From NCBI GenBank assembly GCA_965637545.1, contig OZ281495.1, positions 20,274,001 to 20,338,000 of the forward strand: a stretch of 64,000 bases of DNA, read 5' to 3'. Within the stretch, counting starts at the first letter, position 1. Every line of letters starts with the position of its first letter. The notes under the pieces were generated by a model, which had not been told where the DNA came from, searched no databases, and saw only the letters and a list, made by a program, of their open reading frames with translations. This DNA is from Phallusia mammillata. Lineage: Eukaryota. The position numbers were made by a program, and so were the translations under genes. This document shows, piece by piece, positions 5,301 through 42,800 of the stretch.

Positions 5301-8300
5301 TTGCCCAGATGTTTCAACTGTAACACAGAACATTTACTCAACTTAAAACATAGATTTGTTATGGAAGCGCCATTAAGTTTCATAAGCAAAGAAAACGGAA
5401 AGTCAAAATTTTATTTGTGGCATGGTAATTGTTTCATGTGCATCATCAACAATTGTATAATATGCACAAATTATACTATTTCACCTTTCGATTTCTTGCC
5501 ACATCGTCGTTGGATGGAAACCGAGTGGAAACGTGAAATACAACTTCTATACTTGAGGTTGCGTAGTAAGGTGACGTTCTGCCTGTACTTCCATCCGTTT
5601 GCAGTTTGCCACTGAAGCCCGTATGAACGCTCAAATCCACCTGTTCAATCACAATTTCCGCTTATTAGGGGGTGTGTTTGGGGTTGATTAAACCACTGAA
5701 TCAACCAAAGTCAACATCCACTTTTGTGCGTAAATATGAGTGAGTTTCAATCACTCAAAAGCATCCCGCAAAAAATAACAAAGGGGGGAAAGGGGAATGG
5801 AACCCCAAAATAAACCATTAAATTTGATCATAGGTGTTTGTTTTTCAACGTCACGACAAGCCACACTCGTTGAATAAAAGGAAATATACATTGTCGCTGA
5901 AAAATTATCAGTTTATATGTCAACAAAGAGAATTTTAATAAAATGCTTTGGGTTAGGCACTTTCCTCAATCGATCACAGATTAATCCATGAGTATCAATT
6001 TATTTGCAGAAATGTCACCACACAAAGTTCAAACATGTTCGTATAAGTCGCTTCATCGCAATTGAAGTGCAGTGCGTAGTTATTGCAACTAACAAATGCG
6101 TTTAAACAAACTACGACACTTTACGATGAAAAGGGACATCTATTATGTATGCAAGCGTGCGTAAACACAACTAGTGACCATTCCGATGATTTACGGTGTC
6201 ATAAAGTGGCAAAAAGATTGGGGCAATTATTCCTAAAGCAAATCAACTGGGCAATGAAATGGTTGGTACCTTTCAAATGGTTTCCCTTTTCTCCAGTTAA
6301 ACAAACTTATAGAATTGCATATCTTACCTCCCAACCGAGACCCGACACAAAATCCTCGTATTCTTTGCTGCCTCCAGTGTTGGATAGCACCGACAGCTTG
6401 TCCTCTTGACCTTGCGCAATGTAAAACACCGCAACTTTGTGAGTCTCTCGGCTGAAAAGTATCAGAAAAGTTCAGTTTGCCATTACAGTAATTGCCAAAT
6501 GCACAAATTCGAGAAAATGTTCGAAGAAAATCCCTACAATTCAACATAAATGTGAACCAAGCATTATCAACGCTTACCAGTGTCGGGAGTCAAGATTTTT
6601 CAGTTCTCGAAGCAGACGTTCGTTTTTCTTTAACAAACTGACACGATCCCGGTTGTCACGTGATAGGAACCCCATCTCAATGCATAGAAGTCGTGCGTGG
6701 TAGAAGGGGGAGTGGGCGGGGACAGTGGGGCGTGGTTTGACTGCACCGCACTGCCAACTACAAGAATAAAGACGTTGTAGCAGTGAAACGGTAAAAGGCT
6801 TATCGGTTGTGTTGTGAAAATACCGACAAACATTCTAATGCAGTGGTTATTAAGTTTTTTGACGTGGCAAGATGAATGACATTACACCCGTAAGTAAGGC
6901 AAGCTTGTTTGGTTTTTGTGGTACTAAGTCAAAGGATAAACTGGAACAATCGACACGGTGTTTTTAACAACAAATGCAACTTGATTTGAATGCCTACGTT
7001 AGTAGAAACAGGCTGTGTAGGGTAGGTAACGAATATTGTTGTGAAGAAACAGTAGATGATTACGAACTAACCAAAATCTTTTAACGTCAGTCACTGCAGT
7101 TAACAAAGCCCATTTGAACAGAGCACTTTTTTGTGCGTTTAATTTAAGAAAATTAAAATTTCAGAATAATTCTCGCGACCGCTTTTTCTCCCAAGTTGAA
7201 ACAAATTTCGTCCCTTGAGGAGCCAATGGCACCTCTTTGAGAACCACTGGTCTAATGCTAAGTATATTTGAGTTTATTGAAACAAATTTCTATACATTTG
7301 TGTTTTCTAGCCTAACCTTGTGACACAGGCACTTTCGGCGTAACTTCCTCCCAATTCTTCGTGGTGGCCAAGCAGACACTTGGTGGCTCTCAACTGCACG
7401 TCATCGGACACGCATGAGGGAGTAGGTGAAGGAATGTTCAACGGCAAACCGATTCTTGACTGGCATTCGGGACTGGTCCAACCAACATATTGTAACAACT
7501 ACACACAAACATACGTACGTGGACTGTGGTGAAGTTAATTTCAGTTTTGGGGACCAAACGCTGCATTAACAACTTTTCATTATCGCAAATATAAAGAAAT
7601 TTAAACGACTAGTTTTGACCAAAAATAAAATATGCCAATATAAGACACTAAAAACAAATCACACTAGATTATTAACATGTACAGTATAGCATAAACATAA
7701 GACACTTAGGAAAATCTGCATAGTATTAATCGGTAAATGTTGTTTGTATCTGAAACACATGTGGTTAGTTTCAGGTACCTGGTCTAATTGGTCAGAAGCG
7801 TCGTTGACAGGTGATTCCCCGTACAAGGGAATGGGTGTTGGCACCACCTTGCGTTGTCGTTTATCTTCTTCCTGTGAATAGTTAAGATAGGATTGGCAAG
7901 ATTCCTTTGCCGCCCGACTGATCTCAGCGTCCAGCGTTGAGATCGGCTCGCAGTGCACTAAAAAAGATATTAGATTCGGTTAAAAGTTTCGAAGATGTTT
8001 ACACCAAATCAGATAAGGATTTTGAAAAGGAATTGCAGGAATAGTAATAAAGTATACATAACCCACTCAACATTCAAAATCATGAAAGGTTTTCACAAGA
8101 TTTTTTCCATAGTCTTACATGAGAGTGAAAAACGTTAATTAAAAACATAACTGCCAGGGAACTGCATGTAGAATACATCTTAGTGCAGTAAATTAAATAC
8201 ATCTGATAGGTATGTTTTTAATTAAATCACTTAAGAAACGTTTTGAAACAAATCTGATGTATTTTATACCTTCATATTTAACCAATGGCCCCAACCATGC

Positions 8301-11300
8301 ATGCCAATAGAAGAGAAAGCAATATTGTGATTGTAACCTACCTGGTCGAGTGATATTAGCGACATCAGGTGGTCCGTACAACACTGACGAATCCCAACAA
8401 TACTTTCCACCTGCGTCACGCACAATAAATCGCACACAACGATTCGAGCTGCTCATACCAGCTGTCGGGTCGCCACAAGGAGCGCTGCTTTCCTGTGCAG
8501 AAACAAATAACAAAAAAAATCAGTTGAAGAGAAAATCAAACATACGAGGATTTCATGAAATAAACTTACTTCTGATGGTAGTTCGACAACAGACATGAGA
8601 CAACTGTCGTTGAATATAAGAAACTGCAAAGCAGAAAAAAGGTTTCACACACAAAAAACTTGTAATAAAGGCAATTCCCAAAAAGAGATCTAACAGATTC
8701 GACAAAATGTTGCAAATCGAAACCCGTGCACAAAATGTTGCAAATCGAAACCGTGCACAAAATGTTGCAAATCGAAACCCGTGCACAACGTTTTAAAAGT
8801 TCCCCCAAATATTAGCTATTTTACCTTGTTGACAAATAACGAACAAACCAGATAAGCAAGTCCAAAAGTCCAACGTGCATGGAAAAGACTACCTTATCTT
8901 CTTTAAGTTTATACCTGGACGTTGGGAGAGTCGAAGAGTTTCGCCGACAGTTCACCAGGTGAGTCATCGACATCATGATGTTCGCTCACTCTACATGTGA
9001 ACACTGATGTTCCACGGGCGAGTGGAAAGTGACCGAGATGATTGTTCAGGTGGGAAAGTACCGTATGTGCAACCAGACTCACTGCACCATTTTTACCTTG
9101 CACCAAAAATAAGGGATTAGTTACTTTACAAACACCCATTGTTAGCATTTAGGTTAAAACTGCCCAAAACGGGTAGTAACACAATAGTTTTCGGCGTTTA
9201 GTTTGGAAATTATATAGATTTATCATATAATTCTTATTCTTATAAAATCCTTTAAAAAATGTAGGACACTGTTATGCTTAACCAAAACATCACGGCTAAA
9301 TTACACTACAAAACATGACGATTAAAAAACTTACCAAGTTTTGCGGTGTTACTTCGTGCCATCGACTTTGGTCTTGCATTTGCAAATATCGATGTTGGTG
9401 GATCTTGAACTTTATCAAGTTGCAAGTAAGGATCAAAATCCTTTGAAGCGAGATCTGATAAACTGTAGCTGTGTTTCGCACTGTGTCCCGGTTTACCGAG
9501 AGCTGCTGTTTGCATCGCCTGAAAGTATTACGATTTTGCATCAGTGTATTCTAACCCGCCAAAACACTCCCCAAAGTGTGTAGCTGATTTTTCTTTTTCT
9601 CTAGGAGCGAGTCAAAAGTGTTTTGTTTGGCTAATAAAACCTGATGTTAATACTATGGACTCAACCAATGTGTAGCGAAACTACAGTTAATGTCGGGTTA
9701 AGCGTAAAAATATTTTTTCACAAACAAAACTTAAAAGTCGTCAATGCTCGTTGCAGTAAATGGGTGACATACCTTGAAAACAGTCCTTATCAAACGTTTG
9801 TCGGTATTTGCTCCGTACGTGTTGATGAGCAATTCCAATGGAACGCACATACACCAATCCAAGATACATTGCAGCAAAGCCACTAGCAACTGGGCAGTAA
9901 AAAGCATAATGTTAGATTTACTGCAAAATCGATTGGAGCAGCTCGCAAACAACCACGTTTCAATTTTCAATCACGCAAATTACATTCGAACCCACCTGTC
10001 GCCCAGAGTCGGTGTTTTTCGCCTCAGTATCGTTCAGTAATGCCGACACACTGAGAGACATCACCTGTAAAAACATCGTTAGTTGAACTGGTGCACAAAA
10101 GGTAAGGAGAAATAAATTAGATCTTGGTCGTTGAATGGCTTAGCAGGCAACTTACCTCAATAATACGTGGAGGCATGTCTGGCATGGTCTTAAGAAGCTC
10201 TTCGCTACAGTGAGTTAACAGATGAAGTTGAGTGCAGGCCACGCACGCCACCACGCGGTTGTTGAACTAGAAATATATTTGTTACTCAAGAATTAGGAAT
10301 TGTTTTTTTTATTACGTTTGACGAGAATTGAAACAACATTTCTGAAATATCGAAGCAGTCAAAAATGCCCAGCATGTCAATACAATATTGGCAAATGCCC
10401 CCTTTTTGGCATTTCTCGACAAAAACATATGTCCCAACTCCCACGATTTACTCGTGCCGTGACAAAGTTTTGAACATTAGCAAAGTGCATTCCTTAATTA
10501 CAACAACACTCTAATCGAAGAAATTTACTTGCGTTGAAGTCAATGAAATAACCTGAAGTAAGTTTAGGCATAATCAAGTCACATATTTTTAAAATTGATA
10601 TTAGATCTGCCCACCTTGAGGGATACAAGAAGGACGTTGATGGCTTCTTTGAGTCTACTATGGCGAGGTTGGTCGGTAGTAAGTTCCTCATACAACCACA
10701 GACCAGTGCTCGACAGCGCCACACAGCGAGCAGAAGATGACGGCTCCTTTTTGCCAGAGGTAAGTAAAGCATCGACAACATAATCCTGATAAAATAGATT
10801 GTTTGAATAAAAACTATAATTCAAAATGAGAAGTTAAATAAACAGCGAATTGTCTCAATGAAACCATAGTGCAGTTTAACAAATTTTAAATGATTATCAC
10901 CGAGATAAGTGACTATTTTCACCTAGATAAGTCAATGAAAAGTATTGCACAAAAGCTACAAGAACATTGGGGGTTGTACAGGTATTTCTAGACATTTACC
11001 ACAATGGACATCAAAAATACAATATATAACGGTCACTGCAAATTCATGATCAAGCCAAATTGTGTATAAAAATTATGCACATATACTATGTCTTACCTTA
11101 ATATTATTGCACACAGTAGCAGTGGGATCCACTGAATCGGGTTTTAACACGGGAATGTCATGATAAAGATTCGCAAAACATAATGTTGAACCAAGTATAG
11201 TTTGGGCTTCCACACGAGGAGCCTGTGAAAAGTACTTTTAATTATGCAAGACAATTTCACAAATATGGACTTTAAAAACACTTACATTGCAACATTTTCA

Positions 11301-29300: not shown

Positions 29301-29753
29301 AAATAGAGGAACCCTATCAACAGACAGCCAGAACATCAGGCATTGTCATGTGTACAGCAGAGTGCATTCCGAGTATGAAACCTATAAAGTACTCCAATTG
29401 AAAATGCTTCAAAAAACTAATGCACCAACCAACAAAGTAATAGCTATCTCTAAACAAGTTTTGGGGATGGATTAAAGAGACAATATTTCCCAAAGTGGGG
29501 TAAATACCTGTTACATAAAAAAATGAAAAACAAAAAACGATGTGCACCATTCAAGTAAGAAACCCAAAACTGAACCTTTCAAAGCTACATTGTAAATATA
29601 AACTAATACACACTTACAAATAACATTTTTAAGATGTTTCAGTCTTGCTACGGCATCTTTTTTGGGATCCAAAAGTTTTTGGATAGATTTTTTCACAGCA
29701 CCTTCACCTTGAGGTTGTCTGTGAATTTTAAACATCCTCAAAGCATCAGACAT
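2384..29753 (-). CDS. RALGAPA: Ral GTPase-activating protein catalytic alpha subunit (RALGAPA1/RALGAPA2 ortholog), about 50 coding exons, about 2479 aa
   Basis: Hand-spliced exons (high to low): 29618-29753, 28568-28681, 28254-28303, 28078-28135, 27762-27805, 27215-27392, 26942-27057, 25696-25837, 25421-25627, 24151-24326, 23682-23816, 23159-23230, 22725-22784, 22535-22657, 21999-22103, 21541-21738, 21312-21434, 21122-21240, 20652-20881, 20384-20545, 20110-20220, 19594-19748, 19139-19232, 18934-19044, 18302-18769, 17489-17579, 16860-17170, 16719-16790, 14615-14799, 12767-12868, 11571-11732, 11354-11479, 11097-11222, 10615-10785, 10156-10266, 9996-10064, 9773-9889, 9335-9518, 8915-9096, 8570-8623, 8342-8492, 7779-7957, 7317-7498, 6578-6757, 6328-6451, 5485-5640, 5159-5317, 3588-3715, 2858-3138, 2384-2733. 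All introns are GT-AG, phases are consistent and the total is 7440 nt. Peptides match recalled vertebrate RALGAPA: [103 protein letters not shown] (Asn thumb), [14 protein letters not shown]. The start may be the second ATG at 29735. Boundaries in the Ser-rich middle (exons 19-28) are less certain. Confidence 0.96.
4631..5025. mobile_element. Non-autonomous hAT (Ac-like TIR) MITE
   Basis: TIRs TAGGGATGGGCC ... GGCCCATCCCTA, a perfect 8-bp TSD GTAGCTAT (4623-4630 and 5026-5033), and internal (C)TCGG/CCGAG subterminal motifs. Confidence 0.92.
7170..7249. mobile_element. Solo end of a Charlie-type element
   Basis: Ends in TTTGAGAACCACTG, the same TIR as at 31689 and 35589. The partner end was not found. 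Confidence 0.55.
8703..8785. repeat. Intronic minisatellite, 3 copies of a 27-28-bp unit
   Basis: CAAAATGTTGCAAATCGAAAC(C)CGTGCA at 8703, 8731 and 8758, head-to-tail with no spacers. Confidence 0.95.
12404..12489 (-). other. Candidate alternative RALGAPA exon (poison cassette or short alternative start [13 protein letters not shown])
   Basis: Acceptor ttctttgcag lies just above 12489 and a consensus donor TGG|GTAAGT at 12404/12403. The 86-nt length shifts the frame if included. An internal ATG at 12442 gives 13 codons in phase with the next exon. Confidence 0.4.
13100..13554 (-). CDS. Candidate alternative RALGAPA coding exon (Ser/Asp/Glu-rich, 151 codons)
   Basis: A 175-codon open frame (13052-13579) lies inside the intron between exons 14615-14799 and 12767-12868. 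It has a strong acceptor (ttttgtgtgtttgtag|GT ATG) and a candidate donor AAT|GTACAA at 13100/13099. Phases are 1 to 0. Confidence 0.6.
15936..16254. repeat. Tandem core repeat (about 145-158 bp, about 2.1 copies) inside the Helentron-like element
   Basis: The anchor CTTTCTTGACCAAA(A)C recurs at 15936, 16081 and 16239, and the block catggaccatctttagaccaatatct...gtgtgtaaatttgaaaaagtttgaaccatt is duplicated. Confidence 0.9.
16274..16343. repeat. (A6-7G)n microsatellite
   Basis: Directly visible run agaaagaaaaaaagaaaaaagaaaaaaag... Confidence 0.95.
26061..26643. mobile_element. Non-autonomous hAT-Charlie-type MITE
   Basis: TIRs CAGGGGTGTCAAACT ... AGTTTGACACCCCTG, a perfect 8-bp TSD ATCTATAT with central TA, and subterminal GCGGCCC motifs. 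Confidence 0.93.
28790..29315. mobile_element. One-ended hAT-like MITE remnant rich in TCTCGAGA/TTCTCAAGAA motifs
   Basis: The right end GAAATAGAGGAACCCTA (reverse complement TAGGGTTCC...) and repeated ttctcgag/cttgagaaat motifs are visible. The left TIR and a TSD were not found. Confidence 0.45.
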
Positions 29754-30173: not shown

Positions 30174-30477
30174 CAGAGGTGTACACGAGCCGAGGTTCCG
30201 GAGTGTCCGGAGCCGGATTTTGCCAAAATTTGCCGGAGTCTAAAAGGAGTCGGAGTTTACGTTTTATTATGCCTGCCGGAGCAGGAGCCGGATCCGGAGT
30301 TAATTTTGCGTTTATTGTTGCGTCGTTGAAACAACAATTGTCTGTTATACCGGAGTATTATCAGGAGTCGGAGTCTGATTTTGCGCTATTTATCAGGAGC
30401 CGGAGTGGAGTCGGAGTCAATTTTTTCGGACCCGGAGTGGAGTCGGAGTCTAAAAAAACAGACTCTGTACACCTCTG
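30174..30477. mobile_element. Non-autonomous hAT-type MITE with GGAGTC/GGAGCC internal repeats
   Basis: TIRs CAGAGGTGTAC ... GTACACCTCTG and a perfect 8-bp TSD CAATGTAA (30166-30173 and 30478-30485). Confidence 0.92.
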
Positions 30478-30626
30478 CAATGTAATGCACAAATTCTAAA
30501 CTTACTTGCAAAATACCCTCATAACAAACACAGATAGCCTATGACATGGGTTGTAAACGTGTTGTTAACTATGAATGTTTTCATTTTTTTACAGTCTATT
30601 TTAGAGATGCACCGAATCGGCTTAAT

Positions 30627-32421
30627 CTGCAACAGGGCTCGCAGTGAATATTTGCACAATGTGCAAACGTAAATGCGCGCACTGTTTTCGCAAAAGTGCG
30701 TACATTTTTCGAAAATGTGCAAGTGCCAAAATGTGCGCACAATTTTTTGTGTGCAGATACCGAAATGTGCAGATCAAAATGTGCGCACTTTTTTCAAAAA
30801 ACTCCTATTTATCCAAATTGTTTAGCCTTCTTTAAGTTATGTTTTGCGCAAAGTGCACAAATATGTGTTAAAACGGCATATCTCGAAAATGCTAATGGTC
30901 AGGGGGTTGGGGTTGGGGTGAGGTAATATCTTAAAAATTCAAAAAAACTACATTCAATAAAACTGCGAACATTTTGATCTGCATAACTTGACATTTATGC
31001 GAACATTGTGCTAACAACGCTCGTTCCCCGTCTTTTAATTTCGGTTCGGCCGAACCGAATAGTTTTACCGAATAAATTCAACCGAAACAACCCAATCATT
31101 TCAGACGTCGTAAAGTTTCGCGTTTGACATGAAAACATAAGCTTTTTTGACATGAAAACATAAGACGGCGCTAGGCATGTAAACTATATGCGACCCGCGC
31201 GAATTATTATTAAACTTATCCGGCCCGCAGTGAAAAAAAGTTTGGTAACCGCTGGTTTAAAAAAACTATAGTTCTGTGAACTTTAAGCTTTGCCAGCCTG
31301 CCAATAAAAAAATGACTTTTTGTCTGGAGTGGGAAAAAACGATTGTTTTAAAATCATGGCGTATAGTTTTGTAATAGATTGCGTGGTGCATTATTAAGCA
31401 AAAAAGGCACGTAGGCCTGTACGTATTAAATTTTTGTTTGCACAAAAATGATCAGTTTCACAAAAGGCATTTGTTTTAAAAAAAACAGTATGCATGCAAT
31501 GCATATAGGCTACCGTTTTTTTTGCAAATGGGTAGCCTATTTTTTAAATTTTTTTAAAAGTAAGTTTAATTCGTGCTGTTTTTCTACACTTCGCCAAATT
31601 GGGTGAAATGTAAAATTTTTATCGTGTTGGGGACGCACTGATTAATGGTTGAACACTGAAAAACAACTTGCCTTCTATTGTTATTAGTCAGTGGTTCTCA
31701 AACTTTCATTATTTTTTCAAAACGGTCCCTTGGCCATTATTTTAAAGGCTCGCGATCCTTAAGCCTAAATGTGTATTTCAGGAAAACGAAAGTTGATTGC
31801 AGGATTTTAGCTGTTTATGCAAAATTACGCATAACAAAGATCCAAAGACAGCATGTGACATCACAGACAAGACAAAAAACATTACTATTATGCGCGAACA
31901 ATCAGGTTTTTGTTAATGGTAATGCAATAGAATAGACTATAAAGAGGCTATTGTTTAGCAATGGATACAGTCGATTTTCAAATCTACTTTGATTTAAACT
32001 TATTTAGTGGCACAAACTGACGCCAAATAAGATAGAATTACTTCAACCTTTTCGCGGTCCCTCCAAAATTGGCTCACGGACCCCAAAAGGACCGCGGACC
32101 CCAGTTTGAGAACCGCTGTTATAAGTATAAGTATTGGGTTATTATTCTAGTGCAGTGATTTCCAAACAGTTGTCCGCAATCTTCTTTTAGTGGCGGGCGT
32201 AGAGAAGAATAAACTAAGCAAGGGATACAAATCGAAACGTATCAAAAGAAGCATATGCATTTGTGAAACAGTATCAACAGGTTATGCGGTAATAGTACAC
32301 GATGAAAGATTGTTCCTCTTTGGAAAATGTGCGCATGTCTTGATCTGCACATTTTCGCGTCTGGAAATTTTAAAAAAATGTGCGTACTTTGTGCAAATAT
32401 TCACTATGAGGGCTGTTGCAG
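30627..32421. mobile_element. About 1.8-kb element with long imperfect inverted arms and nested MITE insertions
   Basis: The left arm CTGCAACAGGGCTCGCAGTGAATATTTGCACAA... matches the reverse complement of the right arm ...TTTGTGCAAATATTCACTATGAGGGCTGTTGCAG, and both share AATGTGCAGATCAA and GTGCGCAC motifs. No TSD was found. It could instead be two truncated copies in opposite orientation. Confidence 0.6.
31689..32118. mobile_element. hAT-Charlie-type MITE
   Basis: TIRs CAGTGGTTCTCAAACT ... AGTTTGAGAACCGCTG and an 8-bp TSD with one mismatch (TTATTAGT / TTATAAGT). Confidence 0.88.
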
Positions 32422-32429
32422 GACTGTAT

Positions 32430-32976
32430 TAAACAACAGGCAATTCAAGTAACCGCGCTTACAGGCATAGATAAAATAAGTGCACCACAGAAACTTTTAC
32501 AGCGATATTCTTAGTTGTATCGTTGTTTTTTGTGAATGGTAATATCGCAAAACAAACCGAACAGCCACGCACTCATCTTGCAGAGGCGAGTCACCGCTGT
32601 ATTGGGCATGCAGCATACGTAAATTTTGCGTTGAAGTTTTTTCACCAAACGAAATTAAATCAAAACTGACATCATCATCGCAACGTTCACTTGTATACGG
32701 TTTTTATACGTTTTTTGCAAATGTATATTTTTGGATAGTAATTTTTTATTATAATACGAAAGAAGGTAATGTAATGGTATTTGGTAACAAACACTTTTTC
32801 AGTTGCTAAAACTATTCTGCTGACTAATTTGTTCATATTGATGAGTCAGCAAGTTTGTTGCTTTCCACATGTATGTTGTTTTGTTTCGGTGGAACCACAA
32901 GCCACCAGCGACAGCAAAAATTACTTGGCTCTCTTGGCCGTTGGCCCTTAAATCTTTGCTATCATTACATTAAGAA
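32430..32976. promoter_or_regulatory. Probable bidirectional promoter region between RALGAPA (minus) and bHLH/THADA (plus)
   Basis: Divergent gene arrangement, locally CpG-containing sequence by eye, AP-1-like TGAGTCA at 32842-32848. A minus-strand donor CCT|GTAAGC at 32463/32462 could end a non-coding RALGAPA exon that splices to the acceptor tttttcag at 29835/29834. The TSS positions are not determined. Confidence 0.5.
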
Positions 32977-33806
32977 ATGGCTGAAAAATTGTCTCCCGGT
33001 CGGACCAAATCGAGAAAAGCATTGTATGCAAGGCACAGGTAGGCAAAGCTTATACGTCGTCTTTAACGTAGTTTGTTCCGAGTTTCCGACCTATAGACAG
33101 TAATGAAGAAATTGACGTATTGTGTATCGAATTTAATTGTCATATTTTTATTTGGCTCAGGAGCAATGTTGTTGCAAGTTACAATCGTTTGAGGGCAGTA
33201 TTACCAGAACAAAATCTTGACCTTGCAGATGGAAGTTATATGCAGGTTGATCACAATATACAAGAGGTCCTTTCTGCAAGCGGAAGTAAATATAACAGAG
33301 TAACTTTAGTCAATCGTGCTAAGTTATACATTATGCACTTGGAAGATGTTGCAAACAGCTTAATACAAGAGGCTAGTAGCAACAAAGCAGAGAAACAAGG
33401 ACAAGAGAGTGGTCAAACCGGTCCCAAAAATACTTTCAAAAACATGACAGATGTGCATCAGAATTTTCTTCGAAACTTTCAGCTGGGTAAACAGATTCAA
33501 AAGTTTGATTTTGATTGTTTGGAATCTCACCAGTTTTCACCAATGTCTCGTGTAAGAAGTGAATTTCATTCTACTAAAAAACAGGCACCACGGAATTCCA
33601 CAAAGAGCTTGCATGGAAATAGCTCACTTTCTGTCTTAGGTTCAGCAGTCCATCCAGCTATATTGATTCCAATAAATGTCACATCAGGAAATGCATTTCC
33701 ATTTATTGTTGAGGCTTATCCAACATCTCCTACAAGTCACAGTGTTGATTTAGGCTTTGTTTCAGCTGGAAATGCAAGCCAAGATACAGTTTCCAGTGAC
33801 AAGTGA
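32977..33806 (+). CDS. Two-exon atypical bHLH protein, STRA8-like, 235 aa
   Basis: Exon 1 is 32977-33038: ATG preceded by an in-frame TAA, encoding MAEKLSPGRTKSRKALYARH plus AG, donor GTAGGC. The intron is 33039-33160 and ends tttttatttggctcag. Exon 2 is 33161-33806, stop TGA. The spliced protein reads RKALYARHRSNVVASYNRLRAVLP (basic/helix 1) and SKYNRVTLVNRAKLYIMHLEDVANSLI (helix 2). AATAAA lies at 33863-33868. The gene model is well supported; the STRA8 assignment comes from a manual alignment only. Confidence 0.8.
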
Positions 33807-33862
33807 TTTCTAAGAATTGTTTTCTGTAAATGTGTTGCAGTTATTGATATTGTGAGTTGTTG

Positions 33863-33881
33863 AATAAAAGTTGTGTTGTAG
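33863..33881 (+). promoter_or_regulatory. Polyadenylation signal of the bHLH gene abutting the splice (probably SL trans-splice) acceptor of THADA
   Basis: AATAAA at 33863-33868, then agttgtgttgtAG (AG at 33880-33881), then aatttggc ATG (33890). Confidence 0.65.
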
Positions 33882-33889
33882 AATTTGGC

Positions 33890-36800
33890 ATGGCACCCCA
33901 TAGTAAAACTAAACTAGTTGCAAGTTTTTCAAAAGATGTAAAAATATATTTACACAACTTGTTTGCCGCAACTGATGTTTGGAAGCACTACAGTATTCTG
34001 GATGAATGTCTTAATGATAAAGCATCAAATTGGAAAACAAAATTTAATGAGGTTTGGTACATCAAAATAAGATTTAATTGATTGTTATTTCGTCACCTTG
34101 TATTTGTGAGTTAAAATATTATATATAGTGTACATATAAAAGAGTGTGATGTATTGTTGCTTAGATATGCACAATATCTTTTACTGACAACCACTGTGAT
34201 GATGAGTTGGTACAAATACTCTCAAATTTGTTTGTTTTCTGCATGGTCAAACATCCTTGCAAAAGTATTTTAAAAAGGTACCTTCACTTTGGCAAGATCA
34301 AATTGAAAAATTCTTTCTTTTTAATACCCATTGTTTTTTCAGCATTTTAAAGGATTGTTCAGACAAGAAACCAGCAGTTTTTATCCATGTGACCAAAGCA
34401 TTTACTGATCTTTGTCAGTCCTGCACAACCCTTGGTGTATCTGCTTGTCAAATCATTCAAACCTATGAACTAAGCATTTCTTCAAATTTTTTGAATGAAG
34501 AGCTGCAGTATGATACAATAATTGGTAAGCAAACATTTTATCACAATTTTTTGATAGCTATAAATTTTGCTGACATGTTTTTGTTGCAGGGGCAGTTGAT
34601 TGTATTAAGCAGCACATCAAAGTTTTGCAACAGAATGAAACTAAGTTGCCTGTAGAAACTTCTGTTTTAAACCTTTTAAGTGATGATCTCAAATGTTTGA
34701 ATTCATTTTTGAACAAACATGAATTTTTTTGCAATAAAAAAGCAATTGAATTGTCACTGTGTTACTTGCAAGATGCATGTGTTTATCTGCTCAAACAAGG
34801 TTAGTTAAAAATCATTTATGATAAGTTACTAAAAGTGACATGTAATGTTTTTAGAGCAATATGAAGGTGCTTGTTGGAATGCTGCTGCACTACTTTTGCC
34901 AAATCTTGTTTTAACTGTTTCAACATTGTCTTTTTATGAAATGGTGGGTATATTTATTTATGGACATTGCACTGAACAAAAAAGTTCATGCTTTTTATTT
35001 ATTTCGTACTGAATTTCAGGTTTACACTGTTTTTTCTATGGAAAAAAGTTTTACTTTGTTAAATGATACCAACAGCAACTTATGCCAATCTGCAAAACTT
35101 GCTGTATGTAATGGGATTTTAGTATTTTTATCGCATGAACATACTAACTTGTATGAGGAGCAATGTGAAACACAGCAAGCAAAACCTAATGCAACCAAAC
35201 TTTGTACAATAATGATGAAAGCCTTTGACTGGGTAAAGCTGATGTCTAAATGGTATGGTCAAGTTTACTGACTTTTTAATGTATAACTTACTTTTCATAT
35301 TAAATGCAGCATCATTGGAATCCCAGATGAAATAGCATTTGGGAGATGCATTCTTCAGTGGTGCATTACTTTGAGGTTTGTAGGATCAAATAAAATGTTT
35401 TGTTAAACAGTATTTGGTAAATAATGAAACACAGTCATTTATTAACACATTTCAATACAAAATACGTTCTTTAGCCTGTTTGTCTTACACTCTTTTGCAG
35501 ACCGGCTGTTATCTTTGCTTTCATACATGTTTATTACCATAACCATTGGAAAGATAAACTTAAAATGTTTTGTGGTTTGGTTCTATGGCAGTGGTTCTCA
35601 AACTCAAATCTGGGCTTTAAGAACATCTTGCGACCCAAGCCTTAAACAACAAAAATGTATTTTTTATTTTTGTATGAATAGGTATCATCCTTAAATGCTA
35701 ACTGTTACTTTCCAAGTTCAGGTTCGTATGATTAACCTCCTATCATTCCCCGTGCTAACGTGTTACAATCGCCGTGTGCATAATAGAAAATTGGAAGGCT
35801 ATTGTATGTATGTTATAATGATTGGTTCATTTTGCTGTATAGCGTTGTCGAGTGAGGCTGTATTTGGCTACGGTGCTATCAAAACTCTCAGAAAACCACT
35901 TACTTATGCTGCAATACTCCAAGGTTACCAAGATAAAGCCACATGAAATGCCTATGATACAATAATTCAGTTATGTCTGAGAATTGAAAATACTTGAAAA
36001 TTGAAATGAAAAAAGTTCGTTTGGGCAGAATTGAATCACCACAGCGCGACCCATTTTGTAACCCTGCGCGACCCATGTTTGGGTCTCGATCCATACTTTG
36101 AGAACCACTGTTCTATGGGGTCATCTTTTTAACAGTGAGGATATCACTAACAGAATCAAAAATGACCCCAGTCTCTGCAAGTTGTGACATTTGTCCACAA
36201 CAACACTTTTTTGAATCAAACAAATGTGATATTCCATGTAATGTTTAGGGGCATAAGAAATTATACGAAGCAATACATACTTTTATTTTTAGAGTACATG
36301 TGAAAAAAGTGAATCTCACAAATGAAGATTTTTCTCATGTTCTTAAATGGATTATGCCTCAGATATGCATGGGGTTGGATCATGCCACTGATCTTGTTCG
36401 TCATCAAACCAGAGATGCACTGGAAAACATTCTCAAAGTAGCTTATTGGCTCTCTCAGAATGGTAAACATGTGTTTTTAGGGATAAATTTATTGATTCTC
36501 AACAAAATATTTTTAGAATTAGCAAATTGTGATTTTGTACGAGGCATGTTAGTTGATGTTCTGAAGTGGAGCTGGCACAAGAGAGCATTGTATGTTGCCA
36601 TAAATTGCATTCTACAACATGTATCACCCTCCAATGTAACAAATCATCAGCCTGATATTGTGTCAAAAATTCTTTCTGGTAAAGTAATAATTTCCTGTTT
36701 TTTATTGATTCCTTGTCAACCAAGCACATATCACATAAACAAAATTGGTTTTAGCTATATGTGACCAGTCACTTGCTCCTTATGCATCCAACCTGTTTTG

Positions 36801-39800
36801 TACACTTGCACAAACCACCCTGGATTTGTGTTCGGATGAACAATCTGCTCATTTTGATTTTATCATGCCAATATTAGAAGCATTGCAAAAATACGATGAA
36901 CATCATTCTCGATTGCTCCTGGATGTATGACAGCAGTACTGCAATATTTTGTAATGTTAAACTTATACGCTGTGCATATTTTTCAGTATTGCTTAAAGAA
37001 GATCCTAAAATTGTTTGGAACAAAGGGCTTAAACTATATCATCTCTAACTTTGCAATTGAAAAAGATAGACGATTAAACATTTTAATTATGTGTCTTAGC
37101 ACTGCCCAACAGTTGGGGTTACTCCAGGTTTGATAATTCATATAAATTTTTATCTATATGTATTATAACAATCTTTAAACAACAGTTTGGTCTTTTTTTG
37201 TTTCTAGAAGAGAGAAAAAACCTTGGAAAATGATGACTGGAGACCTGGTGTGAAGTTTCTTGTTATAAAACAGGCACTGGTGCATCCATCTTCTCAGGTT
37301 AAATACAATTAAAGATAAAATTGTCAAGTGAAATTTGATTGGTTTGTGGTTGGATGGTTATACGTTTAAGCCATTTCTCTTACTTTTCAAATATTTTTTG
37401 CAAAATCATGACCCACTTGAATTTGATATCATGTTTTTTATTTTTCTGATTGTCATTTTTATGGAGACATTATATTTGATCTTATTTTTGGCTTTTAGAT
37501 TCGAATTGATGCTTTTTCACTGATCTGTAATTGCTGGAAACCTTCAGAATTGCTACAAGCTGTTGATTTAGATCTCATTGTCTGTTCTATCCCATACAAT
37601 TTGACTGTTCAATGCCCAGCTTTTCGCCAGCAGTTACTTTGTTTGTTAAAGAAAGTAGGTGACTAAACCATTTTAAAAATACCCAAACCTATTTTTGATT
37701 TTTTTATTAGTTGCTGTCTCGAATAAAACTTAACCACCAGAAGGTATGCAAAGAATTGTTGAAAAAAAATTCTCCGATTTCATGCGATGAGCTAACAGCA
37801 TTCAAGAATCGCTATGAGGTATTTTACTATAATTTATGATTTGGAGTTGTGAAATGCTTCAGTGCAATAAAACTTGAACATGTTTTGACAGAGTTTTATG
37901 AAATGGTTGATTGATTTTTTATTTGATCAATTGTTTGAGGGTGCCTGTTTCTCCAGACGCTATGTTTGTCTTATTTTGTTAACTACCCTTTTTGAAATCA
38001 GTGGACAAGGGCAAGGTATTAACAGTTACTGTTCTCCAAAATCTAAACAGTTTTAAAACCAAGAAAAAAATATTTCATGTCTGTTTTTTCGCAGGCCTGT
38101 GCCCAAATATGAAAACTATTTTGTCAAAAGACAGAATTGATACACTATACAGAACGATGCATGATAATTATGAAGAAAACCGAGAACTCGCTCTTAAGTT
38201 GATGACTTCTTATGGTGCCAATGCTCTTGTAAAGAACCATGTATGTGTAATGATAAAACACAAAACATAGAAAAAAACAAGGAGTTGTTTTAAAATGATA
38301 CAGAATGTAAAAACACAATATAAACCACATTTTACTTGCTTTCGCTGCTTTTGTTTTAAGTGGGATAATGTGTATGTGAAACAATGCATTTTGCTCAAAA
38401 AAATAAAGAAATTTGATTACCTTTTTTTTATTGTATTTTTCGACAATCAGGCGACAGTCCGAAAACTGAAAATTGCACTTTCAATTTGATTACTTGCAAC
38501 ACGAACATAAAAATATGTTTTATTCTTTTGTATTGGCTGTTTAGTTTGAAAAGAATCACCTTCAAGAACAGGAAGATTGTGCAATAAAGCAATGCAGGAA
38601 AACGTACAAGCCAGAAGAATGCAAAGATGCAGCCTTTCAACTTCGGTTGATTGTTGAATTGTCAAATGATTGTTTAACTACGGTTTTAAGGTTAGTTGAA
38701 AAATACTGCTTTAAACCGAACTTAATTTTAAAAGCTTACATTGCTTAAACATGATTTTTTTTTAGAATTTGTCAAAGTATTTTGGCGCAACTTAACACAG
38801 ATCTACAAATGGCAGAAACAAACCTCTTGCAAGCATTATCATCAAGTCCGTTGTATGCAAGCCTTTATTGCATTCGAATGTTGTTGCTGAACACCCAATT
38901 ATGGTAATATATGAGCTCATGCATGCCTTTTTTGTTAAATTTCTTTTTAAGAAGCTTTGCAAATACACGCATTATATTTTCTGTTCTTGCAGCAAAATAT
39001 ATGGCAATACGGGATGGCGGGAATTGATACAGAAGTGCACAAAAGCTTGCTTTGCAGTTTTCGAAGCTGTTTTTCCTGTAGTTGGAAGTGTAAGTCCTGA
39101 AGGACACCTGCCGCAAATGATGGATAACACTGAAAATGATGACAAAAACTCTTACGACAATTTACCTGATCTTTTGCGACCCCTTGTGGATAGTGACACA
39201 CAATCAACACACGGTATTTTGTTTTAAAAAAAGTAATACCTAAATTTGGATATTTGCATACCTTGACAGTTAGATTCATCGTCTGTTTTTGCTTGAGGTG
39301 TATTATAAAACGGAGACGAACATGGGATTGTTTTCTGGATAGGTGATTTCGACGAACGACTTGCAGCCCAACGTGTGTTAGTTTCGTGCTGGAGAAGCGC
39401 CAAGGAATCATCGTTGCTACTGGAGACTATTGCTAAAAACTGTCCATGTGATTCCACACCAGATTCATGCGATGGCCTGCTTTTGCGGCAACAGGTTTGT
39501 ATAAATATGATGTAGCTATTATCCACCCTTCAGCGCTCAACCAAGTAAAAAAATACTCAACTCTTAAGTACATAAATGACATACCACCGCATTGAAAAAC
39601 GAGGTTGGCAGTACTTTCAATTTATAGCCTGCTTGTCGTTTTTTCTACTGTAAATAACAGAAAAAACAATTCACAATTTCCTTCGTATATTGTCTCTTTT
39701 GTTGCATACCGTCTTTTTTGTCGTTCATGCTCAAATTGAAATGAGTATATTTCTTTTGATTTTCCAGCTTTTAGACATAGGATTACATCTTCGGCGCCAG

Positions 39801-42800
39801 CTGATGAATGCTCGCCACCGGGGAGCTTTTGAAATCGCCTATTCTGCATTTAAAGCTTACTGCCCTATTCTGTGGAGGTAAAAGTCAAACATAAACATAA
39901 CGTTGCGGTAATGGCTACCCACGCATAGTTTTCATCCCCGGGTATCTAAACAACTAACACCAAACATCGAATTGAAAAAACTGACTGATAAATTGTAACA
40001 GGCGAATCTTCTTACCTGTTTTTTTTTCTGACAATTACTTTTATGCAGGAATGAAAATCATGAAATGAGTAGTTATGTGGAAAAATGGGCCAACGAGATT
40101 GTGGATAACATTTGCGACCCTGTCAAATCAAAAGCTTTATGTTCCACGCGCAGAAGTGCCGGTTTGCCGTTTTTGGCGCAAGTAAGTCAAAATCTGAACA
40201 GTATTTTTCAAAACGTTTACGTAAAGTGCGAACCTAAAAGCTTGTTATACATTCTTAGGCCCTACTTGGTAGCGAGAAGAACAGTAAATCACGTGCTTGC
40301 TTACGTCACGCGATGTCGTCATTACTGGCAATTCTAGAAGATGATGAGAAAAGTAGCACCAGTTTCGACGTTGTTTCCAAGGTAAATATAAAAAAAGTGA
40401 TTATCTGGTGCCGGTATTCGACAACTCCGTCAGGAGAGTTGCCGTATTTAATCTGCATATCTACATATACATCAAAATCTCGTAACACACGGTGTAACTA
40501 CGAAAAAAGTTTAAAACGGCCTTAGTTGTTCGAGAATGGTCACACCTTTGCTTCAGGAGTTGGTGAGCCTAACAATGCTGTGCGAATGTTTTTACAAGTG
40601 GCTCAAATTGGGGACTTTTAGTTTTAAAATAATACTAGCGAACACTGATGCAGAACACAGATGATCCTCTGAGGTCATTTTGTTTGTTTATTTCAGGTTC
40701 ACGCTCTTAATGTTATTCGTGGTCTAATACGTGACGCTTCTTTGGGGGAGGAAGTTCAACCTTTTCTGTCACATTGCGTAATAGTTGCTATAAAAGGTAT
40801 GTACGTCACCGAAAAAAAACGCTTGTGGTTCCACAAAAATTTCTATGTATGTAAGTAATACATCTTAAAAGTAATGTATGTGTGTCCAAGTGCGTGAAGA
40901 CTTTTGACATACTTTTTCAGGTGAAATGTTCGAATTTTTTTTTGTAGAACGACTTGCATACGGCCGTGTTGCCAAGTCCAATTATATAACTTATAAAAAC
41001 TGCAATAAAAATAATTTTCTAAGATTTGCTGGTTTTTGTTGGCCGGTTCGCGATAAAATTTCAATTTTGAAGCGGTCCGCAATGCAAAAAAATATTGCCG
41101 ACCCCTTAAGTATTGGACCCAGTACTGTATATCCAAAATAAATTAAATCTTTCCAATGCTCAGGTATCGCCTGTAGAACGTGGTCTGTTCGCAACTCCTC
41201 CACCCTGCTCTTTTCCGCTCTCGTCACCCGAATATTTGGCGTAAAAAGAGAAAAAGACTTGGAAAACTCTGCCAAAAATAGGTGATGTCAGGTTTACACA
41301 AACTCGATGACGTTTTTACGTTATTTTTTGCGCCACCAAACGTCATTTATTTGTTTTTGGTTTCAGGATGTCGAGTCACGAATTTTTTACACGTTTGCCA
41401 AATCTTCGGGAATTTCTCTTAAATCAGTTGAAGCAAGACACTGATGACAAAACCATAGTTGGCGTTTCATGTAAATTACGAATTAAAAATAGTTGATTCT
41501 TCTACTACAGTCAGTATATTGCAATTAGATGTCGGTGTGATTTTGTTGAAACGTGTAAGATTTTTTTTTCATTTAAAACACATAACTTTTTTAAATTTTA
41601 TTGTGTGTTAATGAAGGTCAAAAAACCTTTTAAATACTTTTTACAAAAAACTGACTTGCAGATTCTTTAGCTGTTCAAAAAATCGAAAAGCACTCACGAA
41701 CCTACCCAATTCTACTTCTCTTATCCCGACTTTATCCATCTCCATCCAGCAACGATTCATCCACATCTTGTTTAAACAAATTTGTGCCTTATTTAAAAAG
41801 GTATCCTTCTTATAATGTGAATATTGATTCGGAGTTGGGTGGACTAAGACGAATGGACTTTTTAGGTCGAGTTTAAGTGACATATACTTCACTGTAGATT
41901 TGGATTCGCATTGTCGCAGTGACATACTTGGTCGTATAATTTCACTTTATTTACGCTAATGCGCATGCGCACAGGGGGTGTGTAGTGATTTGATGCGTAC
42001 ATTCTATACGGGCCTTAACGTAGACCAGTCCGCCAAAGTTCACAGGATAAATTTGACATTAAAGCCTAGTTGGTGGATTAAGTAACTTTTATGTCTACAT
42101 TATTATAGGATCCAAGTCTTTTCCTGGTTTGTCATTTAAAACTTATTTTCCAAAAAAGGAGGGAAGCATTTAAATTATTAAATTTGAAACGTGTGCTTCA
42201 GACATTTAGACTGACTTGAATACGATTATAATCGTAATCGTTGCACGATATGGCATAAGTCTTTATCAAAAGTAAAACATTTTGATCCACAATCCATTAT
42301 CCTTATCCGTTTTCAACTCAATCCTCAAATTACAAAACCTTATGTTTTAGATGTTTGGAAAGTCCGATACTGAAGATACGAGCAATGGCCGCAACAGCTA
42401 TTTCGTGCGTCGTTCCAAACTCGGAACTCACGTCTACAATTCACTCCTTGTGCGTTTCCACGAAACATGGCTCGTCACAAAACCATTTCCATGGTTGTTT
42501 GTTAGCGGTGAGCCTTTCCTCTGTGCAGAAAACGTGACAGACATTAGATAGAGCGTGCTGCCTCCGAAGCGATTTGTGGCTCCTTAACTTACGGTTTAAT
42601 GGGCAAACTTGATAAAATCTGGTCATGATTTGATTTGGCCGGCCGCAATTTGATTACAGTGCGGTTTTTGAGGTTTCGCGCGTACTCGGAAGATGCTTAA
42701 CGTTCGTTAAAAGTCGATGCTCAAAAACTGATATAGAATCTTCAGGCAGATATAACTAAATGACTTGTTCAGATTCTCAAAAACCATAATAAACTTAAAG

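What the first reader, a model, noticed from the sequence alone, without database searches (positions are those of the whole stretch)
33806..33892. Operon-style junction: bHLH poly(A) signal fused to the THADA splice acceptor
Seen in sequence: the bHLH stop is at 33806, AATAAA at 33863-33868, an acceptor-like tgttgtAG at 33881 and the THADA ATG at 33890. There is no room for a separate promoter. Established knowledge: ascidian operons are resolved by SL trans-splicing and typically have the upstream 3' end directly adjacent to the downstream trans-splice acceptor. Inference: a putative germline regulator and the housekeeping tRNA 2'-O-methylation cofactor THADA share one primary transcript. 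The bHLH gene would then need post-transcriptional control, or THADA would need an additional upstream exon.
Basis: partly seen in the sequence, partly recalled or inferred. Interest (0 to 1): 0.7.

Follow-up and report, generated by a model that had tools for sequence, protein, structure and literature searches.

The report
Sea-squirt bHLH–THADA operon junction

Summary

Shown:
- One RNA assembly carries the complete 16-nt ascidian spliced leader (SL) joined to base 33882. THADA contigs of two other studies begin at 33880/33881. No run shows a cis-spliced upstream exon.
- The genome holds 3179 SL+GT copies, some in tandem arrays.
- The downstream gene is THADA by Pfam.
- The upstream two-exon gene is real. 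It is single copy and has homologues in other ascidians. A Clavelina homologue passes Pfam HLH.
- The same bHLH gene lies directly upstream of a probable THADA gene in another tunicate contig.

This meets the published working definition of a Ciona-type operon.

Not shown:
- The upstream poly(A) site.
- A dicistronic precursor; no contig bridges 33857-33880.
- Absence of an internal promoter.

Canonical AATAAA is the minority pattern in Ciona operons (2 of 18). The upstream RNA seen keeps its own intron, so it is non-productive, and it appears in only some studies, whereas THADA appears in all 20 runs.

"Germline regulator" is untested. Other follow-ups in this scan found many operons in this genome. 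Verdict: a new member of a known kind, of low to moderate interest.

The parts
32870..32894 (+). G+T-rich tract (85-90% G+T) just upstream of the first transcribed base seen; possible region immediately downstream of the start site of the unit
   Evidence: sliding G+T content; X1 contig begins at 32895. Yokomori 2016 reports high G+T at +1..+20 of promoters of trans-spliced and operon genes. Inference only.
32895..33856 (+). Transcribed region of the upstream gene as seen in RNA contigs, at low depth and colinear with the genome
   Evidence: X1 contigs 32895-33165, 33135-33533 and 33510-33856, depth 5.6-6.9 against 71.8 for THADA. Fragments also in X17 and X5. Zero depth at 32200-32800 and in the THADA intron at 35400-35600, so this is RNA and not DNA carry-over.
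32977..33038 (+). bHLH gene exon 1 (ATG 32977; basic region ...KSRKALYARH, last codon split AG|G)
   Evidence: The same ...A(R/K)HR motif and the same split Arg codon occur in the Clavelina homologue P0002 and in L010.
33039..33160 (+). 122-nt GT..AG intron of the bHLH gene, retained in the RNA contigs seen
   Evidence: X1 contig 32895-33165 runs through it, X17 contig 33133-33336 crosses the acceptor, and no 33038>33161 joint is listed. Protein conservation with P0001 begins at the acceptor.
33161..33806 (+). bHLH gene exon 2 (helix 1, loop, helix 2 and a conserved tail ...SVDLGFVSAGNASQDTVSSDK, stop TGA 33804-33806)
   Evidence: The homologue P0002 passes Pfam HLH. Single copy in the genome.
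33807..33881 (+). 75-nt 3' UTR and junction between the upstream stop codon and the trans-splice acceptor
33863..33868 (+). Canonical AATAAA, 11 nt before the acceptor AG; presumed poly(A) signal of the bHLH mRNA (use not shown)
   Evidence: The X1 contig of the upstream RNA ends at 33856 and nothing covers 33857-33880.
33870..33881 (+). G/T-rich tract GTTGTGTTGT plus acceptor AG (33880-33881): the SL trans-splice acceptor of THADA
   Evidence: the X5 loose end carries the full SL. X1 and X6 contigs start at 33881 and 33880.
33882..34051 (+). THADA exon 1. The mRNA body starts at 33882 after the 16-nt SL and the ATG is at 33890, giving a 5' UTR of SL plus 8 nt
34165..35375 (+). THADA exons 2-7: 34165-34277, 34343-34524, 34590-34799, 34855-34943, 35020-35252, 35310-35375. 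The next exon starts at 36293
   Evidence: GT..AG joints are identical in four runs from four studies. Boundaries checked.
38868..42534 (+). THADA exons carrying the family domains (DUF2428 THADA/TRM732; Trm732 C-terminal TPR)
   Evidence: PF10350 at 37.3 and 28.9 bits, above its cut-off of 27. PF25151 at 43.7 bits, above its cut-off of 27.

Best explanation
This is a Ciona-type, SL-resolved two-gene operon. A promoter just upstream of about 32895 drives one primary transcript through the small two-exon bHLH gene and on into THADA.

The THADA mRNA is made by trans-splicing the 16-nt spliced leader onto the unpaired acceptor AG at 33880-33881, so the mRNA body starts at 33882 and the AUG lies 8 nt later. 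The bHLH mRNA is made from the same precursor by cleavage and polyadenylation directed by AAUAAA (33863), which should cut at or next to that same AG.

The two reactions use overlapping sequence. A given precursor molecule therefore probably yields either a bHLH mRNA or a THADA mRNA, not both. In the samples seen, trans-splicing wins about ten to one.

Shown: the SL junction, the THADA exon structure, transcription of the upstream gene, and its conservation as a coding gene. Inferred: the common promoter, the position of the poly(A) site, and the competition between the two reactions.
For: -: the X5 contig reads template-switch tail, then ATTCTATTTGAATA(AG), then 33882 onwards. X1 and X6 THADA contigs begin at 33881 and 33880. 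Six GT..AG introns are identical in four studies. No joint links any upstream exon to 33882.
- that leader is the major Ciona SL.
- 3179 SL+GT copies in this genome (0 for the control pattern), in 553-bp tandem arrays with an SL|GTAAG donor.
- the downstream gene is THADA.
- the upstream ORF has five homologous clusters in tunicate-derived data. Conservation runs from the acceptor to the same stop, and the Clavelina homologue passes Pfam HLH.
- upstream RNA covers 32895-33856, which is just the predicted gene, at 5.6-6.9x, while THADA introns are at zero. It is therefore more stable than discarded precursor. It stops before the junction, as expected for a 3' end near 33880.
- in another tunicate contig (L010) the same two-exon bHLH is followed 165 nt later, on the same strand, by a gene matching THADA exons 2 and 4.
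- same strand, under 100 nt apart and a trans-spliced downstream gene is the published operon criterion. About 10-20% of Ciona genes are in such units.
- Mechanistic argument: trans-splicing needs an outron, taken as at least 51 nt. THADA transcription must therefore start upstream of about 33830, which is at most 24 nt past the bHLH stop codon.
Against: - No contig bridges 33857-33880 in any of the four runs. In X1 the depth of bin 33800-33999 is fully explained by the two flanking contigs, so the dicistronic precursor is unseen.
- No poly(A) end was seen. All runs were contigs, which cannot show ends.
- THADA is held in all 20 runs, but the upstream RNA is clearly held only in studies P1 and P6. 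THADA is about 10 times deeper. This fits separate regulation as well as it fits competition.
- The upstream RNA seen is unspliced at its own intron.
- The THADA identity of the L010 neighbour rests on two weak colinear matches (E 1e-3 and 3e-4).
Confidence: 0.6

Rival explanations
1. There are two overlapping transcription units rather than one. THADA has its own promoter inside the bHLH gene (intron or exon 2), giving an outron of roughly 50-850 nt that overlaps the 3' part of the bHLH gene. The bHLH gene is transcribed separately from about 32895 and ends at the AATAAA. The close junction then reflects genome compaction, not co-transcription.
For: - THADA is present in all 20 runs, while the upstream RNA is clear in only two studies.
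- There is a ten-fold depth difference.
- No bridging contig was found.
- Outrons of non-operon Ciona genes peak near 100 nt, with a mean of 438 nt and a median of 458 nt, which would fit inside the bHLH gene.
- A canonical AATAAA, rare in Ciona operons, would suit an efficiently terminated independent gene.
Against: - A core promoter would have to sit inside a conserved coding exon.
- The conserved bHLH-then-THADA order in a distant tunicate, again with only 165 nt between stop and ATG, suggests the pair cannot easily be separated.
- In Ciona, gene pairs of this geometry behave as operons, with promoters at the 5' end of the unit (Rpl21 example).
- Upstream depth is flat (5.6, 6.9, 6.6) with no step inside the gene.
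Confidence: 0.27
2. The upstream stretch is in practice only the THADA outron in most tissues. The RNA seen at 32895-33856 is unprocessed or by-product precursor, and no separate bHLH mRNA is made in these samples. The bHLH protein would be produced only in a restricted cell type, or not at all.
For: All upstream contigs are colinear with the genome. They retain the 122-nt intron in X1 and cross its acceptor in X17. The unspliced form stops after 21 codons. No spliced joint is listed. No protein of this species was found in the assemblies searched.
Against: - The ORF, its acceptor position, the split Arg codon and the C-terminal block are conserved across at least five clusters, so a protein is made somewhere.
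- Upstream depth is at least three times any THADA intron signal, which is zero in X1, so this RNA is more stable than discarded precursor.
- Its coverage ends before the junction instead of running into THADA.
Confidence: 0.08

Closest known systems
Ciona intestinalis/robusta SL-resolved operons without intercistronic DNA (Satou et al. 2006, PMC1488885; Satou et al. 2008, PMC2760879)
   Same: Both genes are on the same strand. The upstream gene ends under 100 nt from the downstream 5' end. The downstream gene receives the identical 16-nt SL at an unpaired AG. The upstream (5'-most) gene is small with few exons. The two genes are functionally unrelated.
   Different: A canonical AATAAA lies 11 nt before the acceptor, whereas 16 of 18 characterised Ciona operons lack it. 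The poly(A) site abutting the AG, and a dicistronic cDNA, are not shown here. The species is not C. robusta: the genome is 240 Mb with chromosomes over 30 Mb. Other follow-ups in this scan name it Phallusia mammillata; I did not check that.
Caenorhabditis elegans SL1-type operons, as described in PMC1488885 (its references 42, 43)
   Same: There is no intercistronic spacer. A canonical AAUAAA of the upstream gene lies just before the trans-splice site. The general-purpose leader is used for resolution. 3'-end formation and trans-splicing are expected to be mutually exclusive on a given molecule.
   Different: The phylum and the leader differ, and nematodes mostly use SL2 for operons. The competition has not been tested here.
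Non-operon SL trans-spliced ascidian genes with an outron (Yokomori et al. 2016, PMC4691747; PMC11155486)
   Same: The leader is added at the first unpaired acceptor, a few bases before the AUG. A G+T-rich stretch lies near the presumed start site.
   Different: Here the 'outron' would contain a complete, conserved protein-coding gene with its own poly(A) signal.
Oikopleura dioica operons, as summarised in PMC1488885
   Same: They are tunicate operons resolved by a single leader.
   Different: Oikopleura has 23-30 nt intercistronic spacers, a different leader, and no AATAAA in its upstream cistrons.

Membership tests
Ciona-type SL-resolved operon | Neighbouring genes on the same strand | tested here: met
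   Both genes are on the + strand: the ORF and its splice sites and the GT..AG joints of THADA.
Ciona-type SL-resolved operon | Under 100 nt between the upstream gene's end and the downstream mRNA's 5' end (working definition, PMC2760879) | tested here: met
   The stop codon at 33806 is 75 nt from the mRNA start at 33882. This bound holds wherever the poly(A) site lies.
Ciona-type SL-resolved operon | Downstream cistron is SL trans-spliced at the junction | tested here: met
   The X5 contig carries the full 16-nt SL joined at 33882. X1 and X6 contigs start at 33881 and 33880. The SL sequence was checked against PMC1488885 Table 1.
Ciona-type SL-resolved operon | The organism has SL RNA genes | tested here: met
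   3179 exact SL+GT sites against 0 for the control pattern. Tandem 553-bp arrays show SL|GTAAG, a hairpin and a U run.
Ciona-type SL-resolved operon | The upstream member is a real protein-coding gene, not merely an outron | tested here: met
   Five homologous clusters share the exon boundary and the stop. P0002 (Clavelina) passes Pfam HLH. The gene is single copy and transcribed. Caveat: the RNA seen retains the intron.
Ciona-type SL-resolved operon | The upstream mRNA's poly(A) site directly abuts the acceptor AG (no intercistronic DNA) | tested here: inconclusive
   Only contigs were available. The upstream contig ends at 33856 with no poly(A) tail and nothing covers 33857-33880. This is compatible with the feature but does not show it.
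Ciona-type SL-resolved operon | An unresolved dicistronic precursor exists | tested here: inconclusive
   No bridging contig in X1, X5, X6 or X17. Contigs drop rare forms, so absence proves nothing.
Ciona-type SL-resolved operon | A single promoter at the 5' end and no internal start site | not testable with these tools
   This needs TSS-seq or CAGE, or a promoter deletion. The only hints are the first contig base at 32895 and the G+T-rich tract at 32870-32894.
bHLH transcription factors (Pfam PF00010) | The protein matches the HLH profile above the gathering score | tested here: inconclusive
Exon 2 alone gives no Pfam hit. Its homologue P0002 (E 4e-16 to exon 2) scores 26.1 bits against a cut-off of 20.7, and P0004 scores 20.0, just below. 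The Atlas lead is HLH at only 0.81.
STRA8-type bHLH (Pfam PF23175) | The protein matches the bHLH_STRA8 profile above the gathering score (25 bits) | tested here: not met
   Only sub-threshold hits were found, and only in homologues: P0002 at 18.6 bits and P0004 at 13.8 bits. The window's exon 2 gave none.
THADA/Trm732 | DUF2428 core and Trm732 C-terminal TPR domains | tested here: met
   PF10350 scores 37.3 and 28.9 bits and PF25151 scores 43.7 bits, all above the cut-off of 27.

The most novel reading that the evidence does not exclude
An evolutionarily conserved tunicate operon ties an orphan, atypical bHLH factor to the widely expressed THADA gene. Output of the bHLH protein would be gated after transcription by two switches on the shared precursor. 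One is retention of its own 122-nt intron, which stops translation after 21 codons. The other is a direct contest between AAUAAA-directed cleavage and SL trans-splicing, 11 nt apart. A tissue-restricted regulator could then ride on a constitutive promoter.
Probability: 0.15. Interest if true: 0.5.

Novelty: new member of a known kind. Interest (0 to 1): 0.25.

Why it matters
The result gives an RNA-verified 5' end for THADA in this species: spliced leader, 8 nt, then AUG. This shows that gene finders must split the bHLH and THADA models at 33881/33882. It adds one more validated junction to the roughly 10-20% of ascidian genes that sit in operons.

The pair may also serve as a small test case for an open question raised by Satou et al. 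2006: how upstream 3'-end formation and downstream trans-splicing share one site. This junction carries a canonical AAUAAA right at the acceptor, the two RNAs differ about ten-fold in level, and the upstream RNA is intron-retaining. Otherwise it is an ordinary ascidian operon.

Tried and rejected
- Pfam on bHLH exon 2, THADA exon 1 and the 36300-36761 ORF gave nothing.
- The word search found a single homologue. The full HMMER search was then used because the protein was left open.
The contigs of P0001, the Clavelina gene and the ENA homologues therefore could not be inspected for a THADA neighbour.
- tblastn of all later THADA open stretches (36.2-46 kb) against L009 and L010 found nothing at E 1e-3. 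L010 has much longer introns and the locus ends before the conserved domains, so the THADA identity there rests on exons 2 and 4 only.
- A whole-window versus L010 comparison found only the bHLH exon shared, so no wider synteny is visible upstream.
- A paper search for THADA plus Ciona gave nothing relevant, as did Phallusia plus operon.
- A cis-spliced upstream THADA exon is rejected: no such joint appears in four runs.
- DNA contamination as the source of the upstream coverage is rejected: depth is zero in flanking intergenic DNA and in introns.
- A paralogue as the source is rejected: the locus is single copy.
- The joined (spliced) bHLH and THADA proteins were never searched. Exons were searched one at a time by reference.
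Full report
**Observation.** An open frame ends with TGA at 33804-33806. AATAAA lies at 33863-33868. The tract GTTGTGTTGTAG ends at 33881, and an ATG begins at 33890. As bare motifs these are weak. AATAAA occurs 156 times on both strands of the window, so a 75-nt gap contains one by chance roughly one time in ten.

**The two genes.** Downstream exons match the THADA/TRM732 core (PF10350, 37.3 and 28.9 bits) and the Trm732 C-terminal TPR domain (PF25151, 43.7 bits), all above their cut-offs. The downstream gene is therefore THADA.

The upstream gene has two exons: 32977-33038 and 33161-33806. They are separated by a 122-nt GT..AG intron that splits an Arg codon.
- Exon 2 alone has no Pfam hit.
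- It has one close homologue (P0001, 52-54% identity) and four more distant ones.
- One of these is annotated as a BHLH domain-containing protein of the ascidian Clavelina lepadiformis. It passes Pfam HLH at 26.1 bits against a cut-off of 20.7.
- Conservation with P0001 starts at the acceptor and ends at the same ...SDK stop.
- The ...A(R/K)HR basic-region end and the split codon recur in Clavelina and in a metagenomic tunicate contig.

The gene is therefore real and belongs to a small ascidian bHLH family. The STRA8-type bHLH model scores only below its cut-off (18.6 and 13.8 bits against 25), and only in homologues. "STRA8-like" and "germline" remain leads.

**RNA evidence.** I laid contigs from four RNA-like runs, each from a different study, on 30200-36199. 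The runs behave as RNA. THADA contigs are spliced at six identical GT..AG introns. Depth is zero in flanking intergenic DNA (32200-32800) and in the long THADA intron.
- The X5 THADA contig carries, directly before 33880, the letters AGTACGGG followed by ATTCTATTTGAATA. With the AG that follows, this is the 16-nt leader ATTCTATTTGAATAAG, the major Ciona SL (PMC1488885 Table 1).
- From my own knowledge, the eight letters before it look like the end of a template-switch oligo. That would place the leader at the very 5' end of the captured mRNA.
- The THADA contigs of X1 and X6 begin at 33881 and 33880.
- No run shows a joint from any upstream exon to 33882.

THADA mRNA therefore starts with the SL joined to 33882, and the AUG lies 8 nt later. 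The genome itself holds 3179 exact SL+GT sites against 0 for the control pattern. These include 553-bp tandem arrays with SL|GTAAG, a hairpin and a U run.

**The upstream RNA.**
- In X1, three overlapping contigs cover 32895-33856 at depth 5.6-6.9, against 71.8 for THADA. Fragments also occur in X17 and X5.
- The locus is single copy.
- Coverage begins 82 nt before the ATG, just after a tract that is 85-90% G+T. Yokomori et al. link that property to promoters of trans-spliced and operon genes.
- Coverage ends 7 nt before AATAAA.
- Nothing covers 33857-33880. The depth of that bin in X1 is fully accounted for by the two flanking contigs.
- The RNA is more abundant than any THADA intron (zero depth). 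It is therefore not simply discarded precursor, and it does not run on into THADA at comparable depth.
- It is colinear with the genome through its own intron in X1 and across the acceptor in X17, and no spliced joint is listed. Unspliced, the frame stops after 21 codons.
- From the word shares and the model (THADA exons alone 0.31, with the upstream gene 0.69), THADA is held in all 20 runs. The upstream RNA is clear only in studies P1 and P6.

**Comparison with published operons.** Satou et al. define Ciona operons as same-strand pairs less than 100 nt apart whose downstream gene is SL trans-spliced. Where mapped, the upstream poly(A) site abuts the acceptor AG. About 10-20% of genes qualify. 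The stop codon here is only 75 nt from the SL junction, so the pair meets the working definition wherever the poly(A) site lies.

Trans-splicing needs an outron, taken as at least 51 nt. THADA transcription must therefore begin no later than about 33830, which is inside or upstream of the bHLH gene. This junction resembles the minority pattern and the SL1-type operons of C. elegans described in the same paper.

**Conservation.** A JGI metagenome contig from another tunicate (L010) carries the same two-exon bHLH gene: ATG 7691, intron 7774-7867, stop 8556-8558. On the same strand, 165 nt later, an ATG at 8723 opens a gene whose second exon and a later exon match THADA exons 2 and 4. The matches are colinear, with E values of 1e-3 and 3e-4. 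Nothing else in the 64-kb window matches that locus. The bHLH-then-THADA order is thus probably conserved between distant tunicates, as expected if the downstream gene depends on the upstream promoter. The gap in L010 has no AATAAA.

**Conclusion.** The operon reading is the best explanation (about 0.6), but co-transcription, the poly(A) site and the lack of an internal promoter are inferred. The main rival (about 0.27) is an internal THADA promoter inside the bHLH gene. It is favoured by the unequal and uncoupled RNA levels and by the missing precursor. A minor rival is that the upstream RNA seen is only precursor.

Other follow-ups in this scan report many operons, and the same leader, elsewhere in this genome, and they name the species Phallusia mammillata.

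Noticed in passing
window 33039-33160: The bHLH gene's own 122-nt intron is retained in the only contigs that cover it: X1 32895-33165, and X17 33133-33336 across the acceptor. The unspliced RNA would stop after 21 codons (CAC AGG TAG). This could be regulated intron retention or precursor RNA.
   Followed up: partly
L010 7691-9085 (JGI metagenome contig Ga0210059_1000941) and L009: Another tunicate carries the same two-exon bHLH gene directly upstream of a probable THADA gene, with 165 nt from stop to ATG. Candidate acceptors are AG 8613-8614 and 8688-8689. There is no AATAAA in the gap. Its THADA introns are far longer than here.
   Followed up: partly
G000:C3:11108338-11147465 (L007 shows one unit): Tandem array of 553-bp units, each with the 16-nt SL followed by a GTAAG donor, a short hairpin and a U run. 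These are presumably the SL RNA genes. There are 3179 SL+GT sites genome-wide, many of them dispersed.
   Followed up: partly
window 31600-32200 and 30200-30480: Very deep RNA contigs (up to 236x) carry several different loose ends at 32117-32119 and at 30477. These look like dispersed repeats expressed from many loci, lying in the intergenic region between RALGAPA and the bHLH gene.
   Followed up: no
window 29511-29753 (- strand): The first coding exon of RALGAPA (MSDALRMFK...[22 protein letters not shown]) lies on the minus strand. RALGAPA and the bHLH-THADA unit are therefore divergent, with about 3.2 kb between their start codons.
   Followed up: no
window 30519-30926 and 32282-32452: Short ORFs on both strands have similar peptide wording (..CAHF..). 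This suggests copies of a small inverted-repeat element in the intergenic region.
   Followed up: no
window 32841-32850: TGATGAGTCAGC, an AP-1-like TGAGTCA site, lies about 45 nt upstream of the first transcribed base seen (32895). It may be chance.
   Followed up: no
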